Below, piece after piece: positions 3,431-39,564 of a stretch of 64,000 bases of DNA. Source of the DNA: Ophelia neglecta (taxonomy: Eukaryota); the NCBI GenBank assembly GCA_965285935.1, contig OZ260664.1, positions 101,618,001 to 101,682,000 on the forward strand. The letters run 5' to 3'. Made by a program: the position numbers and the translations under genes. Below the pieces are notes generated by a model, which saw nothing but the letters and a program-made list of their open reading frames with translations, searched no databases and had not been told where the DNA came from. Position 1 is the stretch's first letter. Each line of letters starts with the position of its first letter.

Positions 3431-4888
3431 CATAAAGTATGCTCATTTTTATATTTGGTATTGCAAAATGAGTATCATTACAATAATTGCTCTGGAGAGC
3501 ATATACGAGTATAGGGTAGGTATGTTCTCCCAGAAGGGGGCCTGGGGGCTACCCCAAACACCCCCCTATACCCACATTAAAGTAAGGGAATGAGATGGAT
3601 GGAGGGGGGGGGGGAGGGGGGAATACACAGAGGTTTACCCCTTTACCCCATTAAAGTGAGGGAATTGAGAGGGAGGCGGCTGCGCGAGATACAAAGACAC
3701 CTCATAAACTGTCCTTGTCTATGCTGCAGCTACACGACAATAATGAGAACAAAAATCGTCTTGAAAAATGAAGCTATTTCATCAAACTGACAGTTTAGTA
3801 ATAACCAGACTTGTGGATGAATAAATCAGAAGTATTTTTGTATTTAATCTGCTAGGTAGGGAATCAGTGGTGAGTCTACATGGAACTGTTTTCATACAGA
3901 TAAGAGGGTATTTATATGGCACATGGCCGTCACAGAAACAGCCCCACTTCAGGTATGGACCTGTACTAGAAACAAGCTAATGTAATCCAGGTGTAATCAG
4001 ATATAATCAGGTATAATCACCATTCACTGCCATTAATCAGACCTATAATTGGAGGAGGGCCTTGCCAGCACTTGTACTGACAGTGTATCAGGAAAAACAG
4101 GGCACACCGAGGTCATACAGGGATTAATTTGATTGCTAGCGATTGCCAGTTATCGCCAGTTACCGTCGTGCAGTGATCGTGTTAAGCTGGTAAGGCCGCT
4201 ACTGGGCATAAACCAGATGTATGACCATACCTGGAGGGTATTTGACAGGGTAGGCAGCTATAGTGAGTTTATGACTGCGATGAGCCATTAGAGCATGAAC
4301 CTGTACGGCGGGAAAAGGCAATATGGACGAGATTAATATAGGGCGGAGGTTGGGAGGGTTAAATTAAGGGCCAGAGTTCACACAGAGGGTGTCGGGTGGG
4401 TCTCTCACAAAGGGGGTCTGGGAGCTTATAGAGGGTGTGGGATGGGTGTCTCCTCCCACAGGTGTCTGGGGGCTTACTGAGGGTGTGAGATATGTGCCAC
4501 CTCCCAGAGCGAGGTCTAGGAGCTAAAACAGGGTGTTGGATAGGTTTTTCAGTCTGTCTGGGCCCCCATACCCTCCTCTGGAATCCCACGCCCCCAAGAC
4601 TTTCAATAGAGCACTGTATGGGAATGAAACACACAGACCCCTGTGTACCACCCTACATCACCAGAGAGGGCATGGACAGAGTGTTGGATAGATTTCTCAG
4701 TCTGTCTGGGGCCGCCAGACCCTCCTCTAGAAGGATACACCTATCCCACAGCTTCAAGACATTCATTTGAGCACTGTAAGGGAAGAAAATACACAGACCC
4801 CTGTGTACCACCCTACATCACCAGACATTAACACCTCACCCCCATTCCATCCAACCCCCCTTATACCCGTATTCCAGTCAATATAGTA

Positions 4889-5998
4889 TAGAGCCAATGG
4901 TGGTGGACTGGTTTATGGTCACTGGTAATAAAAACTACACTTCACCACTGATATATTGTACACGGTTCAATCAGGTCCGGTCAGAAGTGTACCATGACCA
5001 TACCTTTATATTCACGGATAGGTCGAAGCTCGAGGAGAAAGTGACGGCGGCAGCTGTCGCGCATGCCTTCACCTCCAGGATGCGCCCCCCAATCACAGCT
5101 CCATTTTTACTGCCGAAATAACGGCCATATATTTTGCTCTGGACCATATCATCCAGTCTAGAGACAGAAAATTTGTTATCGCCTCAGACTCAATGTCGCC
5201 CCCTCCAGGCACTAGAAGGGTTTAGCTGGTCTAACCCTTTGGTTCTCTCCCGGCGAGAAACCTTAAATAAAATACTCAAAAGAAGAAAAACTGTTATACT
5301 TCTGAGGGTGCCCAGCCACGTGGGCATCAAAGGCAACGAGGCTGCCGACAAATGTGCAAAAGAGGCACTGGAAGATCCCATCTTCCCAATCAAAATCCCG
5401 TCTTCTGACTTCAAGAGCCCAATAAACCAGTATGGCTGGAAACAATGGCAAACCGCCTGGGACCAGACCATAGAAAACAAACTGCACTCTATCTGCCCCT
5501 CCATACCGAAATCATTTCGACAGCCTCTTGCCTCCCGGAGGGACGACTTGATCATGTCTCGTCTGCGCATCGGCCACTCACATTTTACACACACTCACCT
5601 TCTGAGAAGAGAGGACCCACCTTTTTGTGAGGGCTACCAATGCCAGATTACCATCCAACACATTCTGTTGGAATGTAGCGATTTCGCCGAGGCTAGATAC
5701 CGTTTTTATAAAGTTAACAACCTCAAAACCTTATTTGACAAGGTCTGCCCACAGCAGATCCTTAATTTCTTAAAATCTATAGATCTCTACTACAAAATGT
5801 AGTAGACCTAAAACGTGGAAACCATCTTAAAACATACGAAAGTTTAAGGAACTTTCTTTTATCTATTTATTAAACAACTAACCTTTTATCTCTCTTTACT
5901 AACACTTTTTAGTCAGAAAAACATCTGACCCATCCACGTAGAAGACTTTTTATAAAATAGAACTCAATAACCACTTACTTCTTACTATTATCCCCATA
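4889..5998 (+). mobile_element. I-group (I/Nimb-like) LINE fragment: RNase H plus C-terminal CCHC region, frameshifted
   Basis: FTDRSK, VPSHVGIKGNEAADKCAK, SRLRIGHS, TIQHILLEC motifs; near-identical to 50101-51210. Confidence 0.9.
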
Positions 5999-6678
5999 CA
6001 ATATAGTAAATTTATGTAGAGTTAGTTGGGCCGTGATGACCTGAATTCTTTGCTTCTAGGATGAGAGCTGCTGGAAAGAGATTGGGACAGGGCGTTTGAT
6101 GTGTATGCAACTAAATACGAAATGGGCCGACAGCAGTCTATTTGCCTAATCAGTATCCCCTTATTCTGAGAAAATATATATGCAATATGTTTAAAAGATG
6201 AAATTGTATTGATAAAATGATTGTAACATTAATCTGTATGGGCAACATTCATAATTATTAGTTTTCATATACAAACTTAGTTGTGAATACTTTCTTTTTT
6301 CTTATCAAATCAACAGCAGAATGTAAGTATGCTGCATCATATTAAATACTTGTTCTGATATTCAAGAGCCGACAGGAAACATGAACACACTACCGAATGC
6401 CATCTGAATGAGCATGGCCAATTATTATCAGCATCCTCGCCAAGTCCACAGTCCCATGATTCTGGTATAGAGGGCCAGTCCATCTGGGCTGAGGCCTAGT
6501 TTGTCGTGTACACGTCCAGTCCAACTTAAAATCAGGGGGTCATTGTGTCAAGTAGACAAGGTCAGTTCACGTTTTAAGGTCGGCGGTCCAATATGTCGGC
6601 TGCAGATGCACAGCCAACGTCCCAGGTTCAGCGGTTCAGCTGTGGTATTCATTTTATTTTCTAAAAAAACAGGTAACC

Positions 6679-6717
6679 ATGAATGTCCCTGAAAGGAGCA
6701 GCCAAGATGGATATTGA
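6679..6717 (+). promoter_or_regulatory. 12-codon upstream ORF (also at 53875-53913)
   Basis: ATG AAT GTC ... GGA TAT TGA is present in both loci upstream of the inferred start ATG. A regulatory role is not shown. Confidence 0.45.
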
Positions 6718-6786
6718 GACACTGTGACAGACACCGGAGACGATTGCTACTTTGTTGATGATATAAGTGAAGTGGACAATAAAACA

Positions 6787-9700
6787 ATGGACAGGGGGAG
6801 AAAGGAACTCCCTGTGTCGGGTTCAAATGCCCCTTCAACATCTGTAGGTAAGCGAAATACTGTGTCCGAGCACAGACCCAGTCCATAGCTCAGAGTCTAC
6901 TGATATATACATTTGAATACGTAATTTAGCCTGTATATATTCGGTTGATCACTTTGCACGTGTTTTAATGTGAGAACTGTTTCAGACAGTGCCTCCGGAC
7001 ATGGGCCGCCATACCCTGACCCAGCAACATGTGAACTAACCGATACACAAAAGTATTTACTTTTAACTTCTGAATGGAAAAAGAAATCCCTCAAGAGCTT
7101 TGACTTTCCTCGGCGGTTAGTATCACATGTATATATGATGCCACACGAGCAATGTATAGAATAAATCAAGCTTAAAACGCGTATTAGGTCAAAGTAAATA
7201 ATTGTCAGTAGTATGATTGTTTTGTTTAATTGGTTGTGTAACAAGAATAGAATGTGATAGCATTTATTAATAACGTCGGGAGACATGAGACACTCGGGCT
7301 GGGGGTGGGGGTCATAGCGATGAGTAGGTTACATTGGGTCTTCTCATAAGCAGCTCATTTACTTAATTTTTATAACATAACATAACAAACACATAAATGT
7401 TTCGCCTGACATTAAGAATAGATGTAATTATTTAAAACTATACCAGAGAACAAAACAGGAATGTAAGTTACTTTGAGAAACGCCAGTTTAAACATAGCTG
7501 GGATGGTGTTTTGGTGGGAGGGGGGGGGGGGGGGGCTGGGGGGGGGGGGCACCGGCCATGGTAAAGGATAAGGATCCTACGTTAATTGGCAATACTGAAT
7601 AATCAGCATATTTTACAAAATTGGGATATTTTTATGCGTTTGTTGGAATATAACTTCATGGATACTGCACTTTTTAGAGCAGGCGAAGGCTAAAAACGAC
7701 AGTGGATACACTATAAACCAAACAAAATATTTAATTAATGTTAATTAATTAACTAGGTACGAAATCACAAGGAATGATGGACCAAGCTCTCATAATTGTG
7801 AGACTAAAACAGGATGCAAATTGTGGCCGTGTTATCATATTAAAGAACAAGCGCTTGCTCCCTCATAAATGCATATACTGATTTATATTATAACATTATT
7901 TGAGACATGAAACTTGGTTTCCTAAAATCAAGTCACCTAACATCCTTTTAAATGGTATTTGTCCTGACCTCTTTTTTTAGGCATTAAACTGACTGAGTCA
8001 GTCAACATTGCAGATATTTATAATACGTGGCTATCCTAAACCTGTTGACCAAGGTTCCTTTAATTAATGCAGGGAAGTGATCTCCTTGCACTGTGGATTC
8101 TTAATGTACTTTAAAACCTGTGAATTAAGACCACCCAAGGGACTGGAAAATGCTGGTCTGATTTTGGAGGTGGTCTGCTTAGACAGGTTGTTAAATATAG
8201 AAAATTTATATCAGGGTCCTCATATTAGTTGTCTGATTTGGCAGGAGGTCTGATTATAGAGGTGGTCTTTAAGACAGGTGTCACTGTATTTATCCACCCA
8301 ACAATATGAGTAGTAATAGTTTAATATCTGTGTTTCAGTAATTACATTTCATCTTGAATGATTTTCTGTCTGCTTGTCATTGTTCAGGCTGCAGGGTAAG
8401 AAAACTATGAAGCTTCAGCCACATTGGCTTACAGACTACCTATGGTTGCGGTATTCAGTGATCGAGAATGCTGTCTACTGTGTTTACTGCCTGCTATTTG
8501 GAAAAGAAGGTCAAACATTCGGTCGGTCTGCAGGTTATAAAGATTGGTCTAACCTGAAGAAGCGTATAGACAGTCATATTAAAGAGGGTTCCCCGCATTA
8601 TCATTGCAAGAATGAGGCTGACACTTATTTATTTCGCAACGTTGGCGCCATGAAAAATGAGAAGGAGGAGGATGTAAACGAGGAGGTGGATTCAATAACA
8701 CTCGAAGACGACCGGTCCGGTTTGATGGAGGACCTCCAGGAAGACAACACAGAGATCAATAGAAAGGTAGGTGGTCTTTACAAGTATACCCTGGGCCCGC
8801 TCCCAGGAAGCAGTCTTAAGGCATCACCGGAATTAAAATCAGGATAGAATTAAAGTGATTATTCGGTTTCAACTTGCTGATATGGGTTTCTGGAATCTGG
8901 AATTTTGTCCTTAACCCAACCATTTTGGTCTTAAACTTAATCTTGGTCAATGGAATCACCAATTAACAAGTTCTCAGTTTATCTAATCCCTAAACTTAAG
9001 ACCGGCTTTAGAAACCAGGCCCTCAAGTTCACCCAACTGTTGCTCCTTGTGAAAATGACATGAATCTACAGTAGTAAATTCCTATGCTTACATAATCTAA
9101 AGAAACATTTTAATCATTTTGTTTACTAGACAAGTAAAAGCATTAATTTTAATTTAATACTCAATGCAAATGTTCCAGATGGCAGTTTGGCAAAAGGCAA
9201 AAGAGTTACCAAAAGAGCAAGTCAACAGATACAGCTAAAATAATACTTCAAAATAAATAAATGCCATGCACAAAGGCCAAGGATAGAAGAGAAAACGGTT
9301 TTATTTCCATTTGTTAGCGGAATGGTAGCATGCAAATGGCAAGTCTCGGCGGCATTACGAAGCTTCGCACACAATTGACATGCAGCATTGTTTTCCATTC
9401 GGAGCTTTGAATTAAATAATGGCCAAATCACTTTAATTTTTAAACTGTACCATTTTCATAATCAGTGCTTGTGTAATTTGGTTGATGGTGCCAATGCTAA
9501 ACGCTGTATAAGCAAAATATTATTAACCAGACAGTCGCTTGATCTTTTTTGATCTGTGTCGAGGTGATCATTCCGATAGCCAACGCCAAAGTCGGACTTC
9601 CCGGAGAGGGAGTATGCTTACAAGCTTAAACACGCCGGTTTTTCTGTCTGGTTCTGACTAGACATGTGAAATTCAACGCAATTCATACCGTTTTCCACAG

Positions 9701-12700
9701 GGTAATCCTCCCTTTAGTCCGAGCCAAGATAATTCATGGTACACTGGTTAAGCAGTGTGACATGACCAATATGTGTACCTTAAGAAAGTAAAATCTAAAG
9801 TGTTGAATTGTATTGTTGCATTTTGCTTTCCATTGGCAATCTTTACCCCTGTCTGATGGGTTAGGTTTCAATAAGTCATTAAAAATATCCATTTTCAGTT
9901 CTCAGTATCAATTGTAGGTCAATTACACGTCACCCATTACTTATGTGGATATGCGTGTTATTCATTATATGATTTGTGTAAAGCTTACTGAAGGAAAATT
10001 GCGCAGAATTCTTATGTCAAAATTAAGACATATTCATTTTCAATTAATAGTTCGAAGTATCAATTGATTCTTTTAGGCGGCCGTTTTAAAGAGATACGAG
10101 CATTTTATCTGACAATTGAAATAAGAACCAAAAATATATCATGTCTCTTGGACAAATCGCAATATTCATCAGCCAAACTGCGTGATAAATGTAAATCTTT
10201 AAGTTTAGGCTACTATTTTTTAAATGCTTTTGAAACAAAATGCACATTAAACGCATGGCATGATAATGAAATTATGACAGAACTTTATAACTATTATTTT
10301 TTAAATAATAAGTGGTCCATAAAAGAAGTTTGATAAGTGTAACCAACAATGCATAAATACAATCTAATTAATTAAATTAATTAATTCTAATTAAACACGT
10401 CTTAAATATATTTAATATGTTTTAATTTTTGATAAAAAGCCAAGGATTTCAATTCTCAATATAGCTCGCAAATATAAAAATGTCAAAGTCAAGTCACTCT
10501 TTAGAATTTGTTGACATGCTTCTTATTAACAAAAATAAGTTTTGTTTGCAATTGCGATAGTGCCTTTCCCATGAACAAAAACGGGAGTAGATGTAAAAGT
10601 TCCTCGCATACTAAACAGAAAGTGGTGTTAAATATCCTCGATATTGCGCTTAGATGGACAGACTTAAATGAAGATTTGTTAGTAATAAAAGTTGAGCAAT
10701 GAAACATGATCATGAATAATGTCAATTTTATTTCAAACAGATTGCCAATCTAACGAACCAACTTTGATGCCAGATAGAGCATAGTTTCTTTTTTGCCCTG
10801 AAAGACTGTGACTGAATAGATTTAATGTTATTGTAGTTTGCATCCTGGCCGGCTGTGGCCTCATGTCCGGGGTAGCATCAACTCCTGACTACCTATATTG
10901 GTCTTTAACGCTTGGTGCCTGAAGAGATGCCACGGTCTCTTGGTTTCATATCATTGATTCCACTGCTAACAAGGTTAATCCATGTCGTCCTACCATAGAT
11001 ATAGAGAATACATATCTATGGTCCTACTAACCTCATCAAGACCTGTAATGGGTTTGTGTTTCAGGAGCTTTTCTCTTGTCTAAGCTAGAGTTTAAGCTTG
11101 GCTCATGCTTGCACAAACAGCCAAAATAAACATTAACAATGGTGTCCGGAGTTGTTCAAGTCGGCCAAGGCAATTTGTATAATTCAAGACCCACTTGTTT
11201 CAAAATAGTTAAATTTGACCGAGAAATTTGCAATAAAACGGCAAGTATGACAGCTGACTGGTATCTGCCGCAATCGAGGGGCGTAGTATCTATGTAAATA
11301 GCAAGTTATCAGAGAGCTTGCCGAGCAATGCGGCCTGCTGCACAATTGCATTCTCACATATCTACCGATATTTCCAAGCAAAAGCAAGACGATTAACAAA
11401 CGTTTGATTAACATATTATGTTGGTGTCATGTTTTGGCATACTGAAACATTCTATGAGTTATCTTTATTAGGTAGATGAACGCTTCAGTTCAAACAGCAG
11501 CCAAGATGGAGATGGAGACACTGGCTCAGACACCGGAGACGAGTGCTACGCTGATGATGATATAGGTGAATTGGACAATAAAACAATAGATAGGTGGAGA
11601 ATGAAACACCTAGAGGAGGAATCTAAACCTGCCTATTATCCCATGCAAGAGGCCATAGCTGAAAAAATAGTCGATAGAATAGAAAGTATTCTTCGGCTAT
11701 ACCATGACAAATGTCTGTCAGACTTCGATGACTTTGAATATCAGATTTATACCGCAAAATTTAATATGTTGGAAGAACAAACTGAAAAGAGGGTGTGTGC
11801 CAGGATGGCAGGATGTTTTCATGACAGTGTGTATCAGGATCCGGCATATGTCAGGGATCTAGCAAAACAAAGGGTTCAAAAATATGTGTTGGCTACAACC
11901 GAAGAGAACAGAAATAAGCAGCTGCTTGGGCTGGCAAAAGCTAAACCGGAGACTTTCTTTCTAATAGTAGCTGATGAGGCTCATTGGGGAGTTGGAAAGC
12001 CGGTTGAAAACGAAACTGGCAAAAAACACATGGCAAATGCGAGCGCTTTGAAAGCTGGGGCACATGACACACTCATCAACTGCTGGACTAATAAATTCCA
12101 GAATGTTATTGTCTTGTTAGTCACTGCTACTAGCTTTAATCTGAAAAGTCAAGATTCCCGACTATTGCATCAACAAGATTTTATCAGGATTCGATCAAAA
12201 GCAAGTAACAAAAATGCAACAGGGAATGACCAGCTGTATTTAGTTACAAAGGAAAGAGCTGTCTATATTGATAATAAAACTGACAAACCAGTCAAAATAG
12301 AGAAGAATAGCGAGGTAATGGAAGATAAATTGCACTGTGTGAAATGGTCTGAGGGGCACCGGGATAAGCTTCTTCAGGGTATGGTGGTTAGACTGCGTGT
12401 ACCAAACATGGAAGGACATGAACCTATATGGTTCAAACAAATATCTAAGAAAACTAGTGGTGAAGTTCAACCGGTCTGCGTGACACATGAGGAAGACGAG
12501 TCTTTGGAACTCATCATGACTGGTAGGGATAGAGAAAATGTCGAAATCAAAGCATACAACAGCAATTGCCAAATGATAGCATACAGAGCCAAACGGTCTA
12601 TAGGTGGTCAGCATCAACTTGGATTTATTGAGGTTAGTACTCTGCAAAAGTTTGAAAAGGGAAATGATGTGTGCAGCAAATTCAGAGTTCACATGATATG

Positions 12701-15700
12701 CGGGGAAGACATTTTAGAGCTTGAAGCGGTCAATGTGACCCATGGATACCTGAAGTATGAAAACAAACAAGAATGCATAGCTTTAGGTCGCCGCCCAACC
12801 GATGAAGGATTTGAAGACCTTGGCCTAGCAATTCATGGCTGCGAGTACACATTCATCGTGGACTATTATGCCGAGCACCACATGCTAAAAGGCGCACAGA
12901 AACAACAAATGCAATACCTATCTTTGAACTTCTTCTACAACACCATGCGCAACACAAAGAAGGACGAACAATTGATCAGAAGTGACAAAGACTACATTAG
13001 TATGATAAAAGGCATGGTGAAGTCACAAAAGATAGATACTAACAATAAAACTATTTTGAATGACACGTTGAATGACTATATGGCCGCTGAATATTCCTAT
13101 TACATATTGATGGAACAGTTATTTTTCCAGTGTAGATTGGAAGCACTTTCCGTTGAGCTCTTTGATGTAAACCCTGGCCAAGCTTTTGAACCTGATTATG
13201 TTAAAACCGTGGATAAATTGATACATGACTTCCACAAGGAATTGTGTAAACACCGGGAGAAGTTACCAAGCTCTGGGAATCAAAATCTTCCCATTGAGGC
13301 TGAAATATTTCAAAAGTGGTATGCATTTTTATGTCAAAGAAGTAGAGATGATTTAAAAATGAAATTGAAAGACCGTGACGATAAAGAAACAGCAAATGCC
13401 TTGATCAGATGTTTGCTTTTCCATGGGTCTTCAGAGATGAATAGTTTAAAATTGTGCCTAAAGGGGTACAGTGCTCATTGTCATGAACTGCTTCAAAGGA
13501 AGTGCAATACTTTTCAGGCCACTAAGACAGACATACTTGCAGAATCAGAAACTTACAGGATTGTTAATAGCGTATGCAGAAAACAAAAGTTGGTTGTAGT
13601 TCGGGTCCACAAAAATATTCGGAAATCTGCAAGGAGCTCTCCCGGAAACAGGTTATACAAGACCATCACCATTGCCAGGGACATTGCCTACGGTAAAACT
13701 TTTGAATTTGAAGTGATACGAGATTTTGGAGAATTCACAGTGAGCACGGTAACAGAAGATGTGACGAGTCAGAAGTACAGAATTCACCGACGACTACAAC
13801 CTGAAATATGCCAATATGAAGATGCCAGGTTTTCAAAGTGTAACAGGGGCCCGCGTGGAGAGCCATGTAATAACTACAAGCCAGTGGCGCCAGATCCCAC
13901 ATGTCAGAACTGTGCTCTTAAGCACACTAGTGACTCTGAAGCGGGGCAATGTTTAGATTACAAACCAGTGGCACCAACTCTCACATGTCAAAACTGTAAC
14001 CACAAACACAAAGTAATCAAGGACTACAATGATCTAAACACCCTACCTTGCATCCTGATTCTTGTTGACAAAGGGAGACTAGGACACACATTTCCAGATA
14101 GTTTCTGTGTACTGGATCAAAGGCAGCAATTCAATTATACCAAAATGATAAGTACCAAAGAAAGGAAGTCTGATTTATATTTGTCCCGCATAATGCAAGA
14201 ACTTGGACGACTCTGTCGCTATGCTTACAAACCTGGACAGATATTACCAAACCATCAGGCGTCATCTTATACTGATCTGCCATATGCTCTGGTTGGGGAA
14301 AAGCTATTCAATTATCTTTTTGAGTCACTAAAAGAAGTTCCTGTGTTTTATGGCTATTTCGCAAAGAAAGGTGACCTAGATGCTTATGTAAAATCCCCAG
14401 CGACAGAGCCAGAGAGGGACGAGGATGACCTTCGTGAAAAGGTTACCAAGTTGGTGGCTAACAATAAAAGTTATGATTCCGGAAACACAAAAAAACACAA
14501 AAACAGGCTGTTACTAGAAGCTGAGCCTCAAATTGGTAAAACAGGCGTTTATCTGAAAACTGTGAGCATATTGAGAAAGAAAATTTGCAAGGAAACGGAA
14601 ATTGAGTATATCGAGCAATACGATTCGTCTGATGAAGAAGATAAAGAGGAAATGATGACAGAACCTTCTCTTCCTGCCACGTATGAAGTAGGAACAACGA
14701 ATGAAAACGCGGACCTATGGAGATATCCTTACTGGAGGGACATGGAATCACAAAAACTCCCAAAAGTGGGACCGGGCAAGTACGATCGTACAATTGGATC
14801 TGCACATTCACCTGGAGGAAAAGAAAAAACTGAAAATTTGTTTCAGAAAGACAGAAAAGGACACAAACAGGAAGGAAGAACCATCGAACACGATTTTGAG
14901 CAAGATCAATTTAAAGCTTACAATTACACCCACAGTTGCCCAAAGTGCAGGATACATGAATTAGGCAGGCAGATCAGTAAACGCGTGAAAATTGAGCCTT
15001 CTGGTAGAATTGATGACTCATTTCATGTGAATGTTAGTATTCCAGATTTGAAAGAATATGAGGATGTACAAACGTTAGTTAACCCAGATGAGTCCCAGAG
15101 AAAAATTACATCACAGACATTAAAAACTGATACATCCCTTGAGAGCTGGATATTTACGCCATCTTACAAAAGGCACAATGATGCTACCGTGAATTACAGA
15201 CATACTATGGTACTCGAAGAGAACAGTGACAAATGTCACTATGTCCACTTCCTAGTGGTGAGGAGGGAAGAGTACCCTCTTTACTGTAGTTACTGGGGAA
15301 GTTCACACGGGATTATAGAGCTGCCTGAAGACATTTCCGTCAAGGGTGATGATGATGTCGTGAAAAAGGTAGATGCCGAAAGCGGCGGCATTGGCTATTC
15401 CCGTCTAGTCATTCAGAGGTTCGCAACACAATTGGGTTGTAAACATATTTTCATGATAGATGATAATGTAATGTCCATTCATGAAATAACCACGCAGTGT
15501 GGTGACGACGGACAGGAGAGAATATTGAGAAAAGGCCGGCATCTACAAATCAAAAATGTTCCTTTTTTCAAAGCTCTGAAGCATATAGAGAACCAACTGT
15601 GCCATCCAAAAGACAAAGCGGACAAAGTCATGCAAATTGTAGACAAAGAAAAGGCATTTGATCATGGTGTGCCATTAGAAGGGCTAGAGGGTTATACCGG

Positions 15701-18700
15701 AAGTTCAGACAAATATGCCGTACTTGGCTGCTTAAAAGTCAGACGAGGCGTCCTTCATGTAAAACAACCATTTAAGAAAACTTATGTGTCTTCTCTCGTT
15801 TTGCTAAACCTGCTCTCACTCAGGGAAAAAAACATCCAATATGATATTAAGGAGAAATCATTCGAAGATGTGCATCTGTGTCAAAGATGCGACGAACGGG
15901 GCTTGTGGTCGTGCAAGTACAACCGATTTGTAATGCGGAAACTGAATTTAAAATCCCACATCATTAGTGATATGTTCTATTGGCCAAAAGATGTGAGGCT
16001 GTCATCATACATTAAAGCAACCCAGAAGCTGCCAGATGAGGAGGATGAAAGAAATAGGCTTCTTAGTTGGGTAGAATCCAAACATCCTCCGTCAAATGTT
16101 CAACAGTACCTGCCTCAGGAAAAAAAGGGTAGCGCGGTAGAAGTATGGTGTAAAAAGTTCAAGTCAACCGTAAAGGACAATGCCCAGTTGCATTTATTGC
16201 TATACCTTGACTCAAATAAGTCACTAGTACAACTCCACGAATACTTCAAAGGTACATGTGGAATTGGTGGTTTTGATCACCACATCATTCTCTTCTCGGA
16301 AGTATTCTGTCGAGCAAATGAATTACTTTGTTACAAAGCCTTTGTTTGTAAACTTATAACGCCTGTGTTTGAAGAACAAACCAAATGTGTTGTGATCTCT
16401 ACTCACAGCATTGAGCACTACACTGTCAGATACATAGCCCTTCACATCACAGGAAAAAGTAAGTAAATTTGATATATAATAACGAATCTAAATGTAATAA
16501 CATATAACTCATTCCATATTGTTCTTCAAATGTATATCATTTGATTTCACTGAATGTTGATCGTCTAACTGTAAATGAATATTGCTATACCTTTGCAGTT
16601 TCTCATCCTCTGGACAATGATGCACTGTTTAATGTCATCGTAACACCCTCAGACTCCACGCCAGCGCAAAAAATTGTAATAATACCCGATTCACCTACAG
16701 AAGGAGAACAAGACAAGCAAGTTTCAAAAGAATCCCATCCATCGCCATCGAGGTAATACACTTTCCAATTATTTCTGCCCGTTTCGTGCGATTATGAAAT
16801 ATCTACATTAAAACAACAACGAACGCAACTGATCCTTATTAAGATCCTCTGACGCCGAAAACCGGATTTCTGCTGAATGAGAATTGCTAATCAGTTACTC
16901 ACATAATCATTTTCCACTACATGTTGTTATTAATGCGAGTTTAAATAAGTCTTCCTCTTCCCAATCCAAATTTAAAAGTGAATCCATCTCTCCTTTACTA
17001 GTTATGTTCCATCTTGCCGGTCCTGGGTATGCCGGCTCAAGGCTGAAAGCAGTGTTCAAATCCACTTCAATACTAAAACACCTGGGAAGTGTTCTACAGA
17101 ATACTCGTAGGCTTTAGTACTTATTATTTCTAAAGGAAAGAGATACAACTTTCTCAAGTCGGGTGTTATACTTACATTACGTAAATAGCCCGTTTTAAAC
17201 TGTAGAGTCATAATCAACGTTCGGTAATTGGAACACCAGGGTTACATCAGACAGAAGACACAAGGTTTTACAAATACCATGGGCCCAAACTCGAGTTGAC
17301 ATGATGGGGAGTGTTTAGGTCATACAGAGCCAAAAGAAACTTTTCCTTAGCTACTTAAAAAAAAAGAAAATAAAAATCGCGAAGCAGCCAACTGGAACCT
17401 TAGTAGAGCAGCTAAAACCCAAAACAAATATGTAAATAGAACGAGAGTGGATGTGATATTATTATCTTCCGCAAAGTGACGGCTTTTTTGTTTTGATTTA
17501 TTGTGAAATGATCTTCCGATGATCACCGACACTCCTATGAAGAGGTTCAATGGTCTGCCCACATACTGGACACCACACTCATTGCAAGTTATTAGAAAAC
17601 TAGTTTTAATCGTATGAAAACAAATAGAAATGGAAGAACTAACTGATTGTGTATTTTTGTGCACAAGCACTGAAAAACTGGTGATACCCCACCACTTCCC
17701 CACCACAACATAAAGACGAGACAGCCATCAATTTTTCGAGAAGTGTGGTACCTGTATGTGGAGACGGCCGCTCTCTGTTTAGGTGCATTGCCGCATAAAA
17801 GCTGTCCACGGCAATTTAAATTGATTAACCCACTTCAAATTCACTTTTGGACATAACATAGGTATATCCGTTGCTATTGAACCAAATCCTAACTACCGCG
17901 GTTTACAATATTAAGTTAGTCCGAGCAATCACCATTTTACAGGACTAGGGAACAAATCGTTGCCTTTACCTATGTTTAGGCATGTATTGTGGAGGAATTG
18001 TACTAGTCATGTCACATTAATAAGGAATCCTTATGTTCTGTCACAAACTCTTTATAGCAATTATGTGTGCAAAACAGTGATAGAAATAATTTAAACTCAG
18101 TTCTTCCAAAGCACACTTGTCTATGTCCTATGTTCACCATTTATTCGTTTGCATGGTTGTTTGACTCTTTGATATATTTTCATGTGGGTCATTTTTTTCT
18201 GTCATGAATAGCAGCCACTGCGCGTTTTTTTCGCAATTCACGCATATAATGTAAGAAAATATTACAGAAACATGCTTTCTTTGACGTCTGATTTTTCCTT
18301 GCAGCAGGTCTGATACCCCCAAACCGACAAGTCTAGGTAATGAATTATTTTTATTTGACCAAAACAGCTATATACAAACTCAAATTAACATATACATTAC
18401 TAAGTCGTCCGGACGCCAACACTGGTTGAGGCTGATTGGTTGCAGGCCCTCCTCTTCATTACAACGCCTTATTAAAGTCAATGAAATAAACTATTATAAA
18501 CATGATTATACATGAGCATAATTAATAATAGTCAGCTTAGAATACAATGTATTTCAACATACATACAGTGCATCCATACATATGTAAACATATCGGAACA
18601 AATGTACATACAAATTGACACATCCATAGAGGTGCATACTATAAAATAGGCATCTAATGTACGACCTTGAGATCAGATGAGGTCATTCAAAGACATAAAT

Positions 18701-19673
18701 GTAAAAACCATAATGCAATCGAAGATACAAAGAAGCAGAAAATTGTTTGCAATCATGCTATAAGCAACACTGAAGTGCCTTCTCTTTAACAAGAATTACC
18801 ACTTAATGCACGAACAGTTGCTTTCTGACAAAGATGAAACAAATTGAACTTATAATTTGATGTATGCTTCCATGTTTTTAATTTCAAGTAGTTAGATATA
18901 TTTTTATATCACTGTGTTTAATAACATTTATTAGACCTTTATGGAATGGATATAGCGCCTATGGCTGGAGCAAGGTTTGTGGTATCGTCATATTTGTACC
19001 AATTCTAATAAGAATGATGGGGTACTGATTGCTATATTTTATGAAAAAGCTTAGGGCACTTCAGTGATGGTTTGCTCGAGAAAAAAATCTCCTGACCAGT
19101 GTGCCATTAGCTCATATTATCATATTAGCTCATTTAGCACACTACTGTGTAATAATCTGTCGAATGTAGGGGGTGCTTGACAAAAAACGGTTGAGAGAAT
19201 GCGCCTGATATTGATTACCAAATACGGATGTCTCACATCCAGGGTATCGCGAGTGCAACATTTAGGGAAAAGAGCCTGGTTTGCTAGACGCTTGTTGATT
19301 TTGCGTTATGTAAATATTAATTAATATTTTTGTTTGATATTTAGTTAAATATAAAACCTCTTCCTTTTTTAAGTCATTTCTTGTTATCATTGGATTCGTT
19401 GTTATTTCAGATGATCAGCAAGATGAAACATTTATCCGTGAGAACTCATGTGTATTATGCCACTCTCCAGCAAGCTTTGAAGAGGCAACATGTTTAAGTG
19501 AGTCAGCACTTGAACAATCAACTGTCGCTGTAGTGCACAACATGCTTTGGGTCCGTTGCATTCGTTGTTCCGGTTGGTGCCACCTGCGATGCTGTCCCAA
19601 ATACTACTCATTTGCCGACTTAGTTCTGATAAACAGAGAAGATAATGGATTTTATTGTACTAATTGTCAATAA
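6787..19673 (+). CDS. Multi-exon GREB1-like gene (~2001 aa): TTF-type Zn finger + circularly permuted SF2 helicase + TAGT/GT-A glycosyltransferase + PHD finger. Exons 6787-6847, 6986-7115, 8388-8766, 11472-16458, 16599-16752, 18305-18336, 19411-19673
   Basis: All six introns are GT..AG with matching phases (1,2,0,1,2,1). Exon lengths 61+130+379+4987+154+32+263=6006 nt give 2002 codons ending at TAA 19671-19673. The start codon is the least certain element. Confidence 0.8.
6986..8766 (+). CDS. Exons 2-3 (6986-7115, 8388-8766): TTF-type zinc finger like the N-terminus of hAT transposases/ZMYM1
   Basis: Spliced peptide FDFPRRLQGKKTMKLQPHWLTDYLWLRYSVIENAVYCVYCLLF...YKDWSNLKKRIDSHIKEGSPH fits the FP..W..W L.YS...A..C..C.LF...W....H....H pattern. 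The phase-2 splice cg|g is conserved in three copies. Confidence 0.82.
8109..8286. mobile_element. TA-flanked pogo/Tc1-mariner-like MITE (copies at 39607-39782, 55489-55665, 61463-61639)
   Basis: TIR CAGT(G/A)AAACCTG..AAGACC / GGTCTT..CAGGT(T/G)TCACTG, mostly TA-flanked; internal ggtctgatt repeats. The left TIR of this copy is decayed. Confidence 0.7.
8793..9022. mobile_element. Harbinger-like MITE in intron 3 (copies ~56172-56401, ~62146-62375)
   Basis: gggcccgctcccaggaagcagtcttaag versus reverse complement of the right end gggcctggtttctaaagccggtcttaag. Superfamily is inferred. Confidence 0.55.
10994..11020. mobile_element. 27-bp micro-MITE CATAGATAT..ATATCTATG
   Basis: 9-bp TIR; 7-bp TSD GTCCTAC (10987-10993, 11021-11027); absent at the paralogous site ~58347. 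Confidence 0.75.
11472..16458 (+). CDS. Giant exon 4: GREB1-like circularly permuted SF2 helicase plus GT-A (TAGT/JGT-like) glycosyltransferase
   Basis: Contains ORF 11571-16466, extended in frame to acceptor ttattAG|11472; donor GTAAGT at 16459. Helicase motifs: LIVADEAHWG (~11973), LLVTAT (~12123), LILVDKGRLGHTFP, MQELGRLCRY (~14196), AEPQIGKTG (~14535). GT-A motifs follow: IFTPSYKRH, HFLVVRREEYPLY, GGIGYSR, FMIDDN (~15459), FEDV (~15864). Confidence 0.88.
16860..18000 (-). mobile_element. Degenerate Penelope-like retroelement remnant (GIY-YIG) in intron 5
   Basis: Minus-strand FLITCNECGVQYVGR resembles the PLE GIY-YIG motif YxIxCxxCxxxYVG. Boundaries are approximate. Confidence 0.5.
18305..18336 (+). 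CDS. 32-nt micro-exon (RSDTPKPTSL) with a NAGNAG acceptor
   Basis: tttttccttgCAG|CAG...CTAG|GTAATG converts phase 2 (end of 16599-16752) to the phase 1 needed by the PHD exon. Confidence 0.68.
19411..19673 (+). CDS. Terminal exon encoding a PHD finger (not in ORF track)
   Basis: After gttatttcAG it reads (D)DQQDETFIRENSCVLC...MLWVRCIRCSGWCHLRC...GFYCTNCQ*, a C4-H-C3 pattern with the PHD W-x-x-C-x2-C-x2-W-x-H-x2-C and F-x-C-x2-C signature. Confidence 0.82.
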
Positions 19674-22600
19674 GTTTATTTTAAAATGGATACATGACGA
19701 TCGGGATTTGTCGACAAAAGCGGTCTACTATCATGCTTACCAATAATCCCACATTCCCTAGAAAGTATTGATTCAACCCATGGAACAAATAGTCCCTTAA
19801 CCCGGTTGCCTACAGTTGGGCAGTCAAGTCTCAATCTGACCGTAGAAGGGCTTACAACAAAATAACTAACGCCTGGAATTCAGGGCTCACTTGTAATGAA
19901 ATGTGGAAAGTAATGGATATCTTCAATCATCTACCCTCACCTCCACCTATTCTCGAAAAGGTAAATGTCTTGTGAGAACAATAGATGCCTATGTAATATG
20001 TTAAACCAGCCTCGATTTTTTGCCACATTGATCTATTGGGGGCGAGTGACTGGACAGCAAGCAAATTAATAAGTTTAGAAAATAGTGTGAAGTATTGTTT
20101 GTGCCGTTTGAAAGTCGTGATACAAGTGTCTAAGATGAATACACAAACACTGTATTCAACATGCGTTTCTGTTCCTGTAAATTTACATGAACTAATATTT
20201 TAAATTGAGACAAGTTATATATATTAAACTTAGTCCTTATTATTTGTGTATGTATCTAAAGCTTGTCGAAGACACCAACTTAACAATGGGTTTTATAAAG
20301 ACCAATGTTAGAATGTGTTTTATTAAGCAGTAAACCTGTATTTGTTATTATGCATGCATGTCATATGTTGTTCATTATGTATACACCTACATATTATATA
20401 CAGTCTTCAAAGTGAATTTTAATGAAACATGCGATAGCATAAAATGAGCAAATAATGTACCTACAGTGTGTATAATAAGATTCTTAATAATTCAGAAAAT
20501 GAACACAGCCTATGCCTTAGATATCAGTTTATAACATTTTAGCCCTTCGCACTTTACACAATTATTTCTTCATGGATCTATCATGACATAAAGCATCAAT
20601 ACTTTAATGTTATTGACTAAATAGAACAAAGAACCTTTACATAATGTGCAGCCTTCCTCTAAGGCAATCTTGATATGTAAATATATCAACACCCAAGTAT
20701 ATATCCTGAAATGCCATATTATATGATATTTGAATAATGAGTAGTTTCCAGTTTAATCGCGATAAGCCTATTCATAATAATTCGATTGTGATTTCTGAAT
20801 AAAATGAAATCGGATTTAATTGCTTGTATTTTATCGTTGGCGTATTTTTTTTGAAGCGACAGAGCTACCGTGGAATTTATTAGTATACCTCGGGAGAAGG
20901 AACTCAACTATATATTTTATAATTGTAAAGATAAGTCAAGAGTTTCACTAAATGTAACTCCAAGAAAAAGAAACTGATATTCGATCAGAAGTCCATGAGG
21001 ATAATGTTGGTAGTGCGTTTCATGCATAGCTCATAAAAGCTAACTCCTGCTCAAAATCCAAACCAAAATAGCTGCACGTCATCTCCACGGCCGCCCGGTC
21101 GAGGGCACAGTAGTATCCAAGCAGATGGTTCAGCGTTGCTTACTACTAGCTGAAGTCAGAGCGTCGTTCTACCTTAATTTGTTATGCCTCAGCCGACGTG
21201 TGAAGAAACACCTGATATTTATACAGGTACCTTTAACCGGACATTTATACATACAAGATAAATTAATCAACAATTGTTCCCGCTGCTGCTTAAGGAGGGA
21301 CTTCGGACAAGATCCGGACACTTTGAATATTCTTGCTCCAGAGAAAAGCCCGTGACAGTCGGCAGGTTGACCTCTTTCCGTATAATTGGGCATAACTATT
21401 ATTGGGCGATGCGATTAAAATCTGGGCTCATATAGAGTGTATACCCGGATTCTGATATGGCGTTGAAGCTTGTACTTATACTTGAATTTGTGGTTATGAT
21501 TTGAATATAAATTTAGCATTTCATTATTGGATTTAGTTTTGGAACTAGAATATGGCGCTGACATACCAGCAGCGAAGTGTTCTTCTGGATGCCTATAGCT
21601 TTGCAACTACGCACAAAAAATGGATTTATGACAGCAAGCAGGTGATAACTCCTTTCTGTAATTAAGCTCATGCTTCACCGACATTGCTTTAGAGATGTCC
21701 TTAACAATGTCAGCGTGTACAGGTACATATGCACACCTGTCATGTCGACAGCCATATTAACAGCTACGTGCAATTGGAAAATGTTCTGTGTCTCGTATTG
21801 CATATAGAAGGAAGTTACTTTTAAACATAACTTTATTTTCTGAATCTATATACACTGGCATAAACATGTCAATCTTCATGAAAATATGCAGGTTGCATAC
21901 TATACATATACGCACGACGTAAGACACAGCCACCGCCCTAAATATCAAATAGCACATTGTTATTTTTTAATCCATACCAATGAGGTGACAAATGCTATAT
22001 ATGAAAAAGTTTATTGAGGACATTCCAATGTTATTTGTTTGCCCAATTGACACTTTTACCTGTCAGCAAGTGTCTTTGAGCTGCTCGTTACTAATAGAAA
22101 AGGGAACATAATATATATATTGCTTGGTCAACCGACCTTTAAAAAATGCATCCATGCCAGATTCCATTCGATGTAAAGAACCTCTTTCTCCCATTCACAT
22201 ACACCATCTGTTAAACTGAACCATGTTAAATATAATTATAGCTATATTGATACACGGAAACAACCGAATTAGTTTACCTCATTCAAAACTGCTTTATATT
22301 ATAAATATAGGCAAAATACAACAAAGCGCCTTCGAACTATACGGATTTCTTGTTTGAAGCTGAGAAAAAGGTTTGAATTTGTTTGATTATGCAATACCCA
22401 TGATAGTAATGTGACACTAATAAGATTGGACTTTGTTTTAGAGGAGTGCGGGAAGGATAGATAGCCCCGAAAAAAATAAAATAAAGCGCAAGCCATACTC
22501 ACATCTCTACCTGAAATATCGCCCACTATATTCATAACATTCCGTGAGCTGTTTCCCAACTGGCATCCTTTAGCAACAGTGACCCTCATTGATATAAAGA

Positions 22601-23642: not shown

Positions 23643-23816
23643 GAACAGCTTGAAGATCATCAAGTGAGGAGATTGGACTTGGGAGACCCCAGCCGATTGA
23701 GGAGGTGGTGGTGACAGACCGTGGTGGTGACAAACCGTCCCAACGACAGCGCTACCGTGATAGTCGTGACTACCAGAAGACCGAATCACACGCCAAAAGG
23801 CCCGGTATGAACAGTA

Positions 23817-24065
23817 TAATGTGCTGGTCATTACGGTTATGTAATGGCCTTCATTGCGGTGGGCGATTGCCTCATTCCGATGCTTACTTAATGGGAGTGG
23901 GTTGGTCCTTTGTCAGCGTGTGTCGACCGCACAGTTTCAACTATATGGGATTAGCTCTGTCGGCTTGGCAGGCCTCGTTTTCATATTCTGGCCGGGCCTG
24001 CCACGTTGTATTCCTCTCCGCGGTCACTCTGGCCCCGGTCAGCAAGGCATGCACTGGCAAATTAC
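23817..24065 (+). repeat. Split direct repeat A1 (=A2 28441-28689)
   Basis: 249 bp; the only difference I saw is GC versus CT in gggcctGCcacg/gggcctCTcacg. Confidence 0.95.
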
Positions 24066-24076
24066 TGGTCTCTAAT

Positions 24077-26871: not shown

Positions 26872-26898
26872 AAACTTATACTGTACATTTTATTTCAG

Positions 26899-39434: not shown

Positions 39435-39564
39435 NNNNNNNNNNNNNNNNNNNNNNNNNNNNNNNNNNNNNNNNNNNNNNNNNNNNNNNNNNNNNNNNNN
39501 NNNNNNNNNNNNNNNNNNNNNNNNNNNNNNNNNNNNNNNNNNNNNNNNNNNNNNNNNNNNNNNN
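39435..39564. other. Assembly gap (130 N)
   Basis: Run of n. Confidence 1.

What the first reader, a model, noticed from the sequence alone, without database searches (positions are those of the whole stretch)
11960..14560. Circularly permuted SF2 helicase with apparently intact catalytic motifs
Motif order is II (DEAH ~11973), III (TAT ~12123), V-like (DKGRLGHTFP), VI (QELGR ~14196), then I (PQIGKT ~14535). Walker A therefore lies about 850 aa after Walker B. All look canonical, suggesting an active ATPase/translocase rather than a decayed scaffold (inference).
Basis: partly seen in the sequence, partly recalled or inferred. Interest (0 to 1): 0.75.

Follow-up and report, generated by a model that had tools for sequence, protein, structure and literature searches.

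The report
GREB1-like permuted helicase, motifs intact
This is one of about fourteen young copies of an animal GREB1-like gene whose helicase part has its ATP-binding loop moved to the far end, a rearrangement already catalogued for this family, and whose ATPase motifs are kept across distant relatives although the human protein's helicase is described as inactive.

Summary
One open exon (11472-16458, +) carries DEAH (nt 11973), TAT (12123), DKGRLGHTFP (14067), QELGRLCR (14196) and AEPQIGKT (14520), in the order II, III, V, VI, I. This is the curated Pfam family cpSF2-GREB1 (PF20692, E 1.5e-66), followed by a TAGT glycosyltransferase domain (PF20691). The permutation is therefore known, not new.

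- The ATPase residues are close to invariant in the 158 relatives examined, for example K990 in 109 of 110. Named relatives come from annelids, corals, a shrimp, an amoebozoan and a stramenopile. Two papers call the human GREB1 helicase catalytically inactive.
- The gene has at least 13 open copies in this genome, mostly in tandem.

Caveats:
- This copy has His where 113 of 126 relatives have Asp in motif V.
- Its private changes look neutral (5 synonymous, 19 non-synonymous).
- Motif I has an invariant Gln at a position I recall as Gly in canonical SF2 helicases.
- No model coordinates were available, so GKT–DEAH proximity could not be measured.
- No RNA data exist.

The scan had already found this family on a paralogue 12 Mb away (s1-733619).

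The parts
11472..16458 (+). Single large coding exon holding the whole helicase module and the glycosyltransferase domain. The listed ORF is 11571-16466.
Evidence: The frame is open for 1664 codons. The acceptor is ttatctttattag|GT at 11472 and the donor is AAAAA|GTAAGT after 16458.
11616..12200 (+). RecA1-like lobe without its first strand and P-loop (aa 16-210). It carries motifs Ia, II and III.
   Evidence: Pfam cpSF2-GREB1 positions 2-164 match at E 5.9e-36, and ResIII positions 64-161 of 164 match at E 0.004, below the cut-off. The AlphaFold2 model has pLDDT 86.8. All 50 listed VIA rows are SF2 helicases or translocases, Z 6.7-8.4.
11742..11792 (+). Motif Ia-like block IYTAKFNMLEEQTEKRV (aa 58-74).
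   Evidence: L67, Q70, T71 and R74 are nearly invariant in the 32-sequence alignment. Strand E54-61 is followed by helix H65-76 in the model. The assignment as motif Ia is my inference.
11973..11984 (+). Motif II (Walker B), DEAH, aa 135-138.
   Evidence: Position. D is kept in 96 of 97 relatives, E in 96 of 97 and H in 90 of 96. DEAH is present in 13 of the 14 genome copies that hold the region; L013 has DDAH.
12123..12131 (+). Motif III, TAT, aa 185-187.
   Evidence: Position. A186 is kept in 88 of 89 relatives and T187 in 87 of 89.
12342..12890 (+). Beta-trefoil domain (aa ~258-440) inserted after RecA1.
   Evidence: The whole-module model matches lectin, IL-1/FGF and MIR beta-trefoils at Z 12.7-15.1, with 112-155 residues aligned.
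12891..13580 (+). All-helical domain (aa ~441-670) between the trefoil and RecA2.
   Evidence: Helices H452-670 have mostly pLDDT above 85. Pfam gives no hit for this piece alone. The fold was not searched separately.
13581..14375 (+). RecA2-like lobe (aa ~671-935) with motifs V and VI.
   Evidence: The model shows an alternating strand/helix pattern: E674-679, H691-707, E714-717, E827-832, E845-850, H871-881, E905-908, H910-920. Pfam cpSF2 positions 366-431 match.
13803..14015 (+). Cys/His-rich insertion in RecA2 (aa ~745-815), a probable zinc-binding knuckle. It is internally duplicated in the young copies.
   Evidence: C747, C757, C766, C806, C809, H811 and H813 are invariant in 17 sequences. 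A 28-residue extra repeat is present in 14 of 15 copies and absent from L026. pLDDT is low at 778-794.
14067..14096 (+). Motif V, DKGRLGHTFP, aa 833-842. His839 is atypical.
   Evidence: Position. G838 is kept in 124 of 126 relatives and T840 in 124 of 126. Position 839 is Asp in 113 of 126. His occurs only in this copy and L019 among the 15 copies. Short-read contigs of X1-X3 carry G instead of C at 14085, the first base of codon 839.
14196..14219 (+). Motif VI, QELGRLCR, aa 876-883.
   Evidence: Q876 is kept in 118 of 120 relatives, G879 in 119 of 120, R880 in 117 of 121 and R883 in 103 of 121. The motif is identical in 15 of 15 copies.
14505..14588 (+). Displaced motif I unit: strand (aa 979-983), P-loop AEPQIGKT (aa 984-991, nt 14520-14543) and helix (aa 990-1006).
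   Evidence: E979-983 and H990-1006 have block pLDDT 94, 95 and 97. G989 is kept in 110 of 110 relatives, K990 in 109 of 110 and T991 in 110 of 110. The piece matches Pfam cpSF2 positions 663-715 of 716 at E 4e-13.
15150..15587 (+). TAGT (TET-associated glycosyltransferase) domain, aa 1194-1339, with FMIDDNV.
   Evidence: Pfam PF20691, E 3.3e-17, 63.6 bits against a 27.5-bit cut-off. FMIDDNV and GGIGYSR are kept in all 14 copies that hold the region.

Best explanation
The stretch encodes the helicase module of a GREB1-like protein. It is an SF2-type two-lobe ATPase in which the first strand, P-loop and helix of lobe 1 (motif I) have moved to the C-terminal end of the module, after lobe 2. The module is followed in the same exon by a TAGT-type glycosyltransferase domain. 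The gene is one of about fourteen young, mostly tandem paralogues in an animal genome.

Shown: family membership, motif order, strong conservation of the ATP-binding and hydrolysis residues in relatives from several eukaryotic supergroups, an SF2 RecA1 fold for the N-terminal block, and purifying selection on the paralogue family as a whole.

Inferred: after lobe 2 the chain returns to lobe 1, so that K990/T991 sit beside D135/E136 and face R880/R883 across the cleft. The family's helicase module then binds and hydrolyses ATP and works as a nucleic-acid-dependent translocase or remodeller that brings the fused glycosyltransferase, and the inserted beta-trefoil and zinc-binding modules, to its substrate. 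The substrate could be a modified base in DNA, as proposed for TAGT/JGT enzymes, or a chromatin protein, as reported for human GREB1.

This particular copy may be weakened, because it has D839H in motif V and shows no detectable constraint on its own branch.
For: - Family: Pfam cpSF2-GREB1 at E 1.5e-66 and TAGT at E 3.3e-17. The N- and C-terminal pieces match the two ends of the cpSF2 profile.
- Motif order and coordinates. No other Walker A pattern lies upstream in the frame.
- Motif conservation: D135 96/97, E136 96/97, Q876 118/120, R880 117/121, G989 110/110, K990 109/110, T991 110/110. Of the 62 relatives with all sites aligned, 50 keep every core residue. Conservation peaks at aa 121-140, 181-200, 821-840 and 981-1000.
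- Taxonomic spread: relatives are only 27-44% identical and include annelids, corals, a shrimp, an amoebozoan and a stramenopile.
- Structure: the model of aa 1-1040 has pLDDT 84.9 and pTM 0.88, with the Walker A strand and helix at 94-97. For the RecA1-only model, 50 of 50 listed structural neighbours are SF2 helicases or translocases, Z 6.7-8.4.
- Selection: 13 of 15 copies are open. Median dN/dS is 0.43 over 65 pairs, and 0.24 against the 59%-identical paralogue. Pooled private changes are 65 synonymous and 134 non-synonymous, omega 0.53, p 3e-5.
Against: - Two papers (passages read) call the homologous domain of human GREB1 catalytically inactive, so activity is not a given in this family.
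- This copy has His at motif V position 839 (Asp in 113 of 126 relatives). Its private changes are 5 synonymous and 19 non-synonymous, omega about 0.97, p 0.56, which cannot be told from neutral drift.
- Motif I lacks the second glycine of the canonical AxxGxGKT motif (canonical form recalled) and has an invariant Gln there.
- The structural Z scores are middling (at most 8.4). Foldseek gave no SF2 match at E <= 0.001 for either model.
- PDB sequence and profile searches were blank.
- The spatial meeting of GKT and DEAH was not measured.
- No RNA run is available. The short-read contigs that were laid are collapsed paralogue consensus and do not confirm this copy's own letters.
Confidence: 0.7

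Rival explanations
1. The helicase module is a nucleic-acid- or protein-binding scaffold without ATP turnover, as stated for human GREB1. On this view the motifs are kept for nucleotide binding or for fold stability only.
For: Shin et al. 2021 (PMC7968844; passages read) and the 2018 review PMC6163654 (passage read) describe the GREB1 cpSF2 domain as catalytically inactive. Motif I has Gln in place of a P-loop glycine. The window copy has D839H.
Against: The residues that matter only for hydrolysis and its coupling are nearly invariant at 22-44% overall identity: the Walker B Glu in 96/97, motif III, and the motif VI arginines in 117/121 and 103/121. A mere scaffold is not expected to hold them. 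No vertebrate GREB1 appeared among the best 150 hits, which suggests the vertebrate branch is the divergent one. That last point is an inference, because the hits are unnamed.
Confidence: 0.2
2. This copy is a recently duplicated, functionally redundant or decaying member of the array. Its intact frame reflects youth, not function.
For: Private changes are 5 synonymous and 19 non-synonymous (omega about 0.97). Eight of the 19 cluster in aa 108-175 of RecA1. D839H sits at a near-invariant site. Two of the 15 copies are already broken, L020 and L025. There is no RNA evidence.
Against: The 1664-codon frame is open, with consensus splice signals at both ends. All other catalytic residues are intact. 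His839 is shared with L019, so it predates their split and both stayed open. 24 private changes are too few to tell neutrality from moderate constraint.
Confidence: 0.3
3. The apparent permutation is an artefact: two unrelated partial P-loop domains, or a mis-assembled join of paralogues, rather than one permuted helicase.
For: The copies are 92-96% identical and tandem, which invites assembly chimeras. The short-read contigs are collapsed. The contact between the two parts was not measured.
Against: The same order, in one uninterrupted frame, is found in 13 open copies here and in relatives from unrelated assemblies. Of the 158 relatives examined, 62 have all the tested sites of motifs II, III, V, VI and I aligned to the one profile. 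Pfam's curated model spans both ends. The whole module is predicted as one body with pTM 0.88.
Confidence: 0.02

Closest known systems
Human GREB1 / GREB1L
   Same: [quoted passage not shown] The same two Pfam families are found here.
   Different: The human helicase domain is called catalytically inactive, whereas here all hydrolysis residues are present and conserved. The human gene has many exons (the review names exons 9 and 10 as early termination points), whereas here the core is one 4987-nt exon. No vertebrate GREB1 was retrieved in four searches, so orthology and the exact residues lost in vertebrates were not tested.
Unnamed GREB1-like proteins of invertebrates and protists (Paralvinella palmiformis, Owenia fusiformis, Palaemon carinicauda, Montipora capricornis, Oculina patagonica, Planoprotostelium fungivorum, Hondaea fermentalgiana 'GREB1-like protein')
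   Same: Same cpSF2 + TAGT architecture and the same intact motifs: DE[AC]H, [ST]AT, GRxGDTFP, QExGRxCR, PQxGKTG.
   Different: At most 38-44% identical. Here the gene is amplified to about fourteen copies, and this copy has His839.
Canonical SF2 translocases and helicases (type ISP restriction enzyme LlaBIII 4xqk, CSB 7oob, DHX29 9cpa, HrpB 6heg, CHD4 6ryr, ALC1 7enn, Hef 1wp9)
   Same: RecA1 fold of the N-terminal block: Z 7.8-8.4, rmsd 3.3-3.8 Å, 132-148 of 195 residues aligned. Motifs II, III, V and VI are recognisable.
   Different: In these proteins motif I comes first in the chain (established knowledge), whereas here it follows motif VI by about 105 residues. A beta-trefoil, a helical domain and a Cys/His knuckle are inserted between or within the lobes. 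The rows lie within 1 Z unit of each other, so no SF2 subfamily can be named.
Kinetoplastid base-J enzymes: JGT glucosyltransferase, and JBP2 (a SWI2/SNF2 ATPase fused to a TET/JBP hydroxylase). JBP2 is recalled, not checked in a call; JGT's relation to GREB1 is stated in PMC7968844.
   Same: A DNA-modifying enzyme domain coupled to an SF2-type ATPase in one polypeptide (JBP2). A glycosyltransferase domain of the same superfamily as TAGT (JGT).
   Different: The enzyme partner differs (a hydroxylase in JBP2). The ATPase is not permuted. [quoted passage not shown]
Circularly permuted P-loop GTPases (YlqF/YawG, RsgA class). Recalled, not checked in a call.
   Same: A precedent that a P-loop NTPase stays active after circular permutation of its motif order.
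   Different: A different P-loop class (TRAFAC GTPases, one domain). The permutation point and function are unrelated.

Membership tests
Pfam PF20692 cpSF2-GREB1 | Profile match above the curated cut-off | tested here: met
   226 bits against 26.2, E 1.5e-66. The same family rings at 31 places of the genome.
Pfam PF20692 cpSF2-GREB1 | Motif order Ia, II, III ... V, VI, I in one chain (Walker A last) | tested here: met
   Coordinates. The N-terminal piece matches profile positions 2-164 and the Walker A piece matches 663-715 of 716. No Walker A lies upstream.
Pfam PF20692 cpSF2-GREB1 | The displaced Walker A strand completes the sheet of lobe 1 next to Walker B | not testable with these tools
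   The model has pTM 0.88 and pLDDT 94-97 at aa 971-1000, but no coordinates or contact maps are returned. The structural aligners report only the first and last aligned residues.
GREB1-like architecture (cpSF2 + TAGT) | C-terminal TAGT-type glycosyltransferase domain in the same protein | tested here: met
   PF20691, E 3.3e-17, aa 1194-1339, in the same exon.
Vertebrate GREB1/GREB1L orthologue | Closest relatives are vertebrate GREB1/GREB1L; N-terminal GREB1 Zn-binding domain | tested here: inconclusive
   No vertebrate GREB1 was seen among 16 + 150 + 4 + 9 hits, and the named hits are invertebrate or protist. Pfam finds nothing in the upstream Cys/His-rich exon 8374-8847.
Catalytically competent SF2 ATPase | Motif I with the GK[ST] lysine | tested here: met
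   AEPQIGKT. K990 is kept in 109/110 relatives. Deviation: an invariant Gln987 where the canonical motif, as I recall it, has Gly.
Catalytically competent SF2 ATPase | Motif II DExH/D and motif III [ST]AT | tested here: met
   DEAH and TAT, conserved in 96/97 and 87-88/89 relatives.
Catalytically competent SF2 ATPase | Motif V as in the family consensus (GRxGDTFP) | tested here: not met
   This copy has GRLGHTFP. Asp is found in 113/126 relatives and in 13/15 genome copies. The effect on activity is unknown.
Catalytically competent SF2 ATPase | Motif VI QxxGRxxR arginine fingers | tested here: met
   QELGRLCR. R880 is kept in 117/121 relatives and R883 in 103/121.
Catalytically competent SF2 ATPase | Nucleic-acid-stimulated ATP hydrolysis | not testable with these tools
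   Needs a biochemical assay.

The most novel reading that the evidence does not exclude
The intact-motif GREB1-like proteins are ATP-driven, chromatin-targeted machines that glycosylate oxidised pyrimidines (5hmC or 5hmU) in animal DNA, a base-J-like hypermodification not known in metazoans. Their amplification to about fourteen tandem copies here would then reflect an arms race with the retroelements that fill this region. The permuted helicase would pump or open DNA for the fused transferase, and the inserted beta-trefoil would read the sugar or the modified base. The evidence does not exclude this. The genome has a TET gene, unlinked, on C8. The transferase domain belongs to the DNA-base glycosyltransferase family. 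The ATPase motifs are under selection.
Probability: 0.1. Interest if true: 0.85.

Novelty: new member of a known kind. Interest (0 to 1): 0.35.

Why it matters
Work on GREB1 has been done on the human protein, whose helicase domain is treated as a dead scaffold (PMC7968844, PMC6163654). In this gene and its relatives the ATP-binding and hydrolysis residues are conserved outside vertebrates. That gives a natural, probably active version on which to test what the permuted helicase of the GREB1 family does. It can also be used to ask whether the fused transferase acts on DNA or on proteins. The tandem amplification supplies a series of natural variants for comparison, including Asp839 against His839. 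The permutation and the domain architecture are already catalogued, so the finding extends known knowledge rather than opening a new class.

Tried and rejected
- **PDB sequence searches.** The whole ORF and the family profile gave nothing useful. The only hit was ComR at E 0.44, in the helical domain, and I treat it as noise.
- **Fold searches with the 1040-residue model**. The lists were filled by beta-trefoil matches, so they said nothing about the helicase lobes. I then folded RecA1 alone, which gave uniform SF2 neighbours with VIA but only weak RecA/AAA+ rows with Foldseek.
- **GKT–DEAH distance.** No coordinates are exposed (one search shows only FASTA files in /data), so this test was abandoned.
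- **A named vertebrate GREB1 for a residue-by-residue comparison.** Three word-indexed searches and the exhaustive phmmer search (best 150 of 270) did not return one. The claim 'inactive in human' therefore rests on the two papers alone.
- **Iyer et al. 2013** (NAR 41:7635, the source both papers cite for the domain analysis). It is not held, so I could not see whether it already notes active non-vertebrate versions. Supplementary figure S3A of PMC7968844 may bear on this, but supplements are closed.
- **Paper searches for prior description.** I searched for an active GREB1-like helicase, for the Pfam names and for GREB1 expansions and found nothing beyond those two papers. One search was swamped by the unrelated gene CPSF2. 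This is not proof that the point is unpublished.
- **Expression.** No RNA run holds the stretch. Laying the three runs offered showed only short contigs, 98-99% alike at high depth. They carry the paralogue-majority letters, for example G at 14085, so they neither confirm nor refute this copy's private letters.
- **Linkage to TET.** Rejected: the only Tet_JBP match is on another contig.
- **Transposition as the mode of spread.** Not supported. The copies lie 50-68 kb apart in tandem and share upstream sequence, which fits segmental duplication.

Full report
**What is there.** The window is a gene-poor, repeat-rich stretch of a 762-Mb genome, at G000 contig C7. One very long open frame, 11571-16466 on the + strand (1631 aa), stands out. 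The frame is open for a further 33 codons upstream. Consensus splice signals bound it: an acceptor ttatctttattag|GT at 11472, and a donor GTAAGT directly after 16458.

**The motifs.**
- DEAH, aa 135-138
- TAT, aa 185-187
- DKGRLGHTFP, aa 833-842
- QELGR, aa 876-880
- PQIGKT, aa 986-991

K990 lies 855 residues after D135. Across the forward frames of nt 4000-20000, the gene's frame holds one Walker-A-type pattern inside the exon, AEPQIGKT at nt 14520. A second in-frame match at nt 16437 straddles the splice donor. None lies upstream of DEAH in the gene's frame.

**What it is.** Pfam assigns the ORF to cpSF2-GREB1 (PF20692, 'Circularly permuted SF2 helicase found in GREB1 proteins', E 1.5e-66, 226 bits against a 26.2-bit cut-off). 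It also assigns it to TAGT (PF20691, TET-associated glycosyltransferase, E 3.3e-17, aa 1194-1339). Searched in pieces:
- aa 1-210 match profile positions 2-164.
- aa 967-1020 match the very end of the profile, positions 663-715 of 716, at E 4e-13.
- aa 66-187 weakly match only the back part of the ResIII helicase model, positions 64-161 of 164, at E 0.004, below the cut-off.

This is the pattern expected if the front of lobe 1 has moved to the end. Shin et al. 2021 (PMC7968844) and a 2018 review (PMC6163654) describe human GREB1 in the same terms, citing Iyer et al. 2013. I read passages of both. Iyer et al. 2013 is not held.

**Anatomy from the predicted structure.** An AlphaFold2 model of aa 1-1040, built on a 42-sequence alignment, has mean pLDDT 84.9 and pTM 0.88. 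Read with the conservation profile, the module consists of:
- a RecA1-like block, aa ~16-210, with a motif-Ia-like IYTA...Q...R block, then DEAH and TAT at strand ends
- a beta-trefoil, aa ~258-440
- an all-helical domain, aa ~441-670
- a RecA2-like block, aa ~671-935, interrupted by a Cys/His knuckle (aa ~745-815; seven invariant Cys/His in 17 sequences), and carrying motifs V and VI
- a strand (979-983), P-loop (984-991) and helix (990-1006), predicted at pLDDT 94-97

The beta-trefoil is well supported, at Z 12.7-15.1 to lectins, IL-1/FGF and the MIR domains of protein O-mannosyltransferases. It also hid the helicase lobes in every search with the whole model.

A separate model of aa 16-210 (pLDDT 86.8) gave 50 of 50 listed VIA neighbours that are SF2 helicases or translocases, at Z 6.7-8.4 with 124-153 residues aligned. 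Among them are LlaBIII, CSB, DHX29, HrpB, CHD4, ALC1, Hef, ZorD, INO80 and RIG-I. The Z values are middling and the rows are tied, so the fold class is supported but no subfamily can be named. Foldseek gave only weak RecA/AAA+ rows. RecA2 was not searched on its own.

**Are the motifs really intact, and does that mean anything?** The exhaustive phmmer search found 270 clusters at E <= 0.001, 102 at <= 1e-10 and 30 at <= 1e-30. I aligned the 161 fetched proteins to a local profile, and 158 of them aligned at one or more motifs. Counts at the tested sites:

| Residue | Kept in relatives |
|---|---|
| D135 | 96 of 97 |
| E136 | 96 of 97 |
| H138 | 90 of 96 |
| A186 | 88 of 89 |
| T187 | 87 of 89 |
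| G838 | 124 of 126 |
| T840 | 124 of 126 |
| Q876 | 118 of 120 |
| G879 | 119 of 120 |
| R880 | 117 of 121 |
| R883 | 103 of 121 |
| G989 | 110 of 110 |
| K990 | 109 of 110 |
| T991 | 110 of 110 |

Of the 62 proteins with every site aligned, 50 keep all core residues and 12 do not. These relatives are 22-44% identical to the query. Those that carry names come from annelids, corals, a shrimp, an amoebozoan and a stramenopile. Conservation along the module peaks on the motif blocks.

Conservation of the Walker B glutamate, motif III and the motif VI arginines over such distances is what selection on ATP hydrolysis would give, rather than selection on fold alone. That conclusion is an inference.

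It contrasts with the statement in both papers that the human domain is catalytically inactive. I could not check the human or any vertebrate sequence myself, because none was returned.

**Two corrections to 'all look canonical'.**
- Motif I is A-E-P-Q-I-G-K-T, with an invariant Gln at a position I recall as Gly in canonical SF2 helicases.
- Motif V of this copy has His839. Asp stands there in 113 of 126 relatives and in 13 of the 15 copies in this genome; only this copy and L019 have His.

**The gene family in this genome.** The protein matches at least 15 loci, plus one short fragment at C7:101569956-101570357:
- ten places on C7 at 101.52-102.07 Mb, 50-68 kb apart
- four on C7 at 89.25-89.92 Mb
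- one on C12
- a 59%-identical paralogue on C7 at 74.37 Mb

Of the 15 copies examined, 13 have one open frame of 1662-1718 codons. L020 is split into two frames, and L025 has stops. L024 has a different 5' end. Motifs VI and I are identical in 15 of 15 copies. DEAH is present in 13 of the 14 copies that hold the region; L013 has DDAH.

Nei-Gojobori dN/dS has a median of 0.43 over 65 pairs of the 12 young intact copies (median dS 0.045). It is 0.24 against the old paralogue, where dS of 1.2 is near saturation. Pooled private substitutions are 65 synonymous and 134 non-synonymous (omega 0.53, p 3e-5 against neutrality). For the window copy alone they are 5 and 19 (omega about 0.97, p 0.56), and 8 of the 19 lie in aa 108-175.

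So the family is constrained, but constraint on this copy is not shown.

**Context.**
- The upstream region 4887-11601 recurs at 50101-64000 as the 5' part of the next copy. This fits tandem segmental duplication.
- The only TET/JBP match is on another contig.
- No RNA run holds the stretch.
- The three runs that do hold it come from one sample. They give short, high-depth contigs 98-99% alike that carry the paralogue-majority letters, such as G at 14085, the first base of codon 839. They do not confirm this copy's own letters.

**How it most likely works.** Shown: membership, motif order, conservation and the RecA1 fold. Inferred: after lobe 2 the chain returns to lobe 1, so the P-loop lysine meets Walker B and faces the motif VI arginines. 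The module would then be an ATP-driven nucleic-acid translocase or remodeller that positions the fused TAGT glycosyltransferase. The beta-trefoil and the zinc knuckle would act as added binding modules.

The substrate is open. The family was proposed to act on hydroxymethylated bases in DNA, and human GREB1 is reported to O-GlcNAcylate ERα. I put 0.7 on the combined statement of family member with a catalytically competent family ATPase. I put about 0.5 on this copy itself being fully active.

**Novelty and verdict.** The permutation, the architecture and the wide eukaryotic spread of GREB1-like proteins are in print and in Pfam. The scan had already followed up a paralogue 12 Mb away and reached the same picture of about fourteen tandem copies (s1-733619). 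What this report adds:
- a count showing that the ATPase motifs are intact and conserved outside vertebrates
- the domain anatomy, with the beta-trefoil insert
- the caveats for this copy

I found no paper stating the first point. This is a new member of a known kind, of moderate-to-low interest.

Noticed in passing
window 12342-12890 (aa ~258-440 of the ORF): A confident beta-trefoil domain is inserted between the two helicase lobes. Its best structural neighbours are sugar-binding lectins, IL-1/FGF and the MIR domains of protein O-mannosyltransferases, at Z 12.7-15.1. Pfam does not see it. I do not know whether it is described for GREB1.
   Followed up: partly
window 13803-14015 (aa ~745-815): The Cys/His knuckle inside RecA2 carries an internal duplication of about 28 residues (the YKPVAP..TCQNC..KH unit occurs twice). 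The duplication is present in 14 of 15 copies and absent from the old paralogue L026 and from most relatives, where alignment occupancy is 0.17-0.21.
   Followed up: partly
window aa 108-175 of the ORF (nt ~11892-12095): Eight of this copy's 19 private non-synonymous changes cluster in 68 residues of RecA1, around DEAH. The cause could be a gene-conversion tract, relaxed constraint or an assembly mix of paralogues. The contigs laid do not cover this part.
   Followed up: no
window 8374-8847 (+) and 19533-19673 (+): Cys/His-rich open frames flank the core exon. Earlier notes call them a TTF-type finger and a PHD finger. Pfam found nothing in either at E <= 0.01. They were not joined to the core exon.
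   Followed up: partly
window 6724-6888 (+) and 11243-11601 vs 59619-59977: A short frame at 6724-6888 resembles the start of the core exon (acidic DD..VDNKT.DR stretch). The exon's 5' edge is also repeated near 59.6 kb. Pieces of the exon start have been copied upstream.
   Followed up: no
window 50101-64000: This is the 5' part of the next tandem copy. It holds an internal duplication: 53893-56904 matches 59872-62886 at 95% identity.
   Followed up: partly
window 23705-27932 (+): A GC-rich (55-57%) block holds three ORFs. One has a reverse-transcriptase domain (E 1.3e-8), and one has a weak phage-integrase SAM-like hit (E 7e-4, below the cut-off). This suggests a DIRS-like retroelement.
   Followed up: partly
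window 31923-32984 (-), 41796-42503 (+), 5134-5802 (+): Other ORFs: a DUF1647 protein (E 4e-16), a reverse-transcriptase fragment (E 5e-11) and a weak RNase H-like piece (E 0.001, below the cut-off).
   Followed up: no
window 37767-38742 and 39435-39564: A satellite-like self-repeating block of about 1 kb, 73-85% self-identity, lies in the bin with GC skew -0.31. It is followed by a run of 130 N, which was left untouched.
   Followed up: no
G000:C7:74371763-74376727 (L026): An older, intact paralogue, 59% identical with a 1718-codon open frame, keeps every helicase and transferase motif, including Asp in motif V. It may be the founder of the array.
   Followed up: partly
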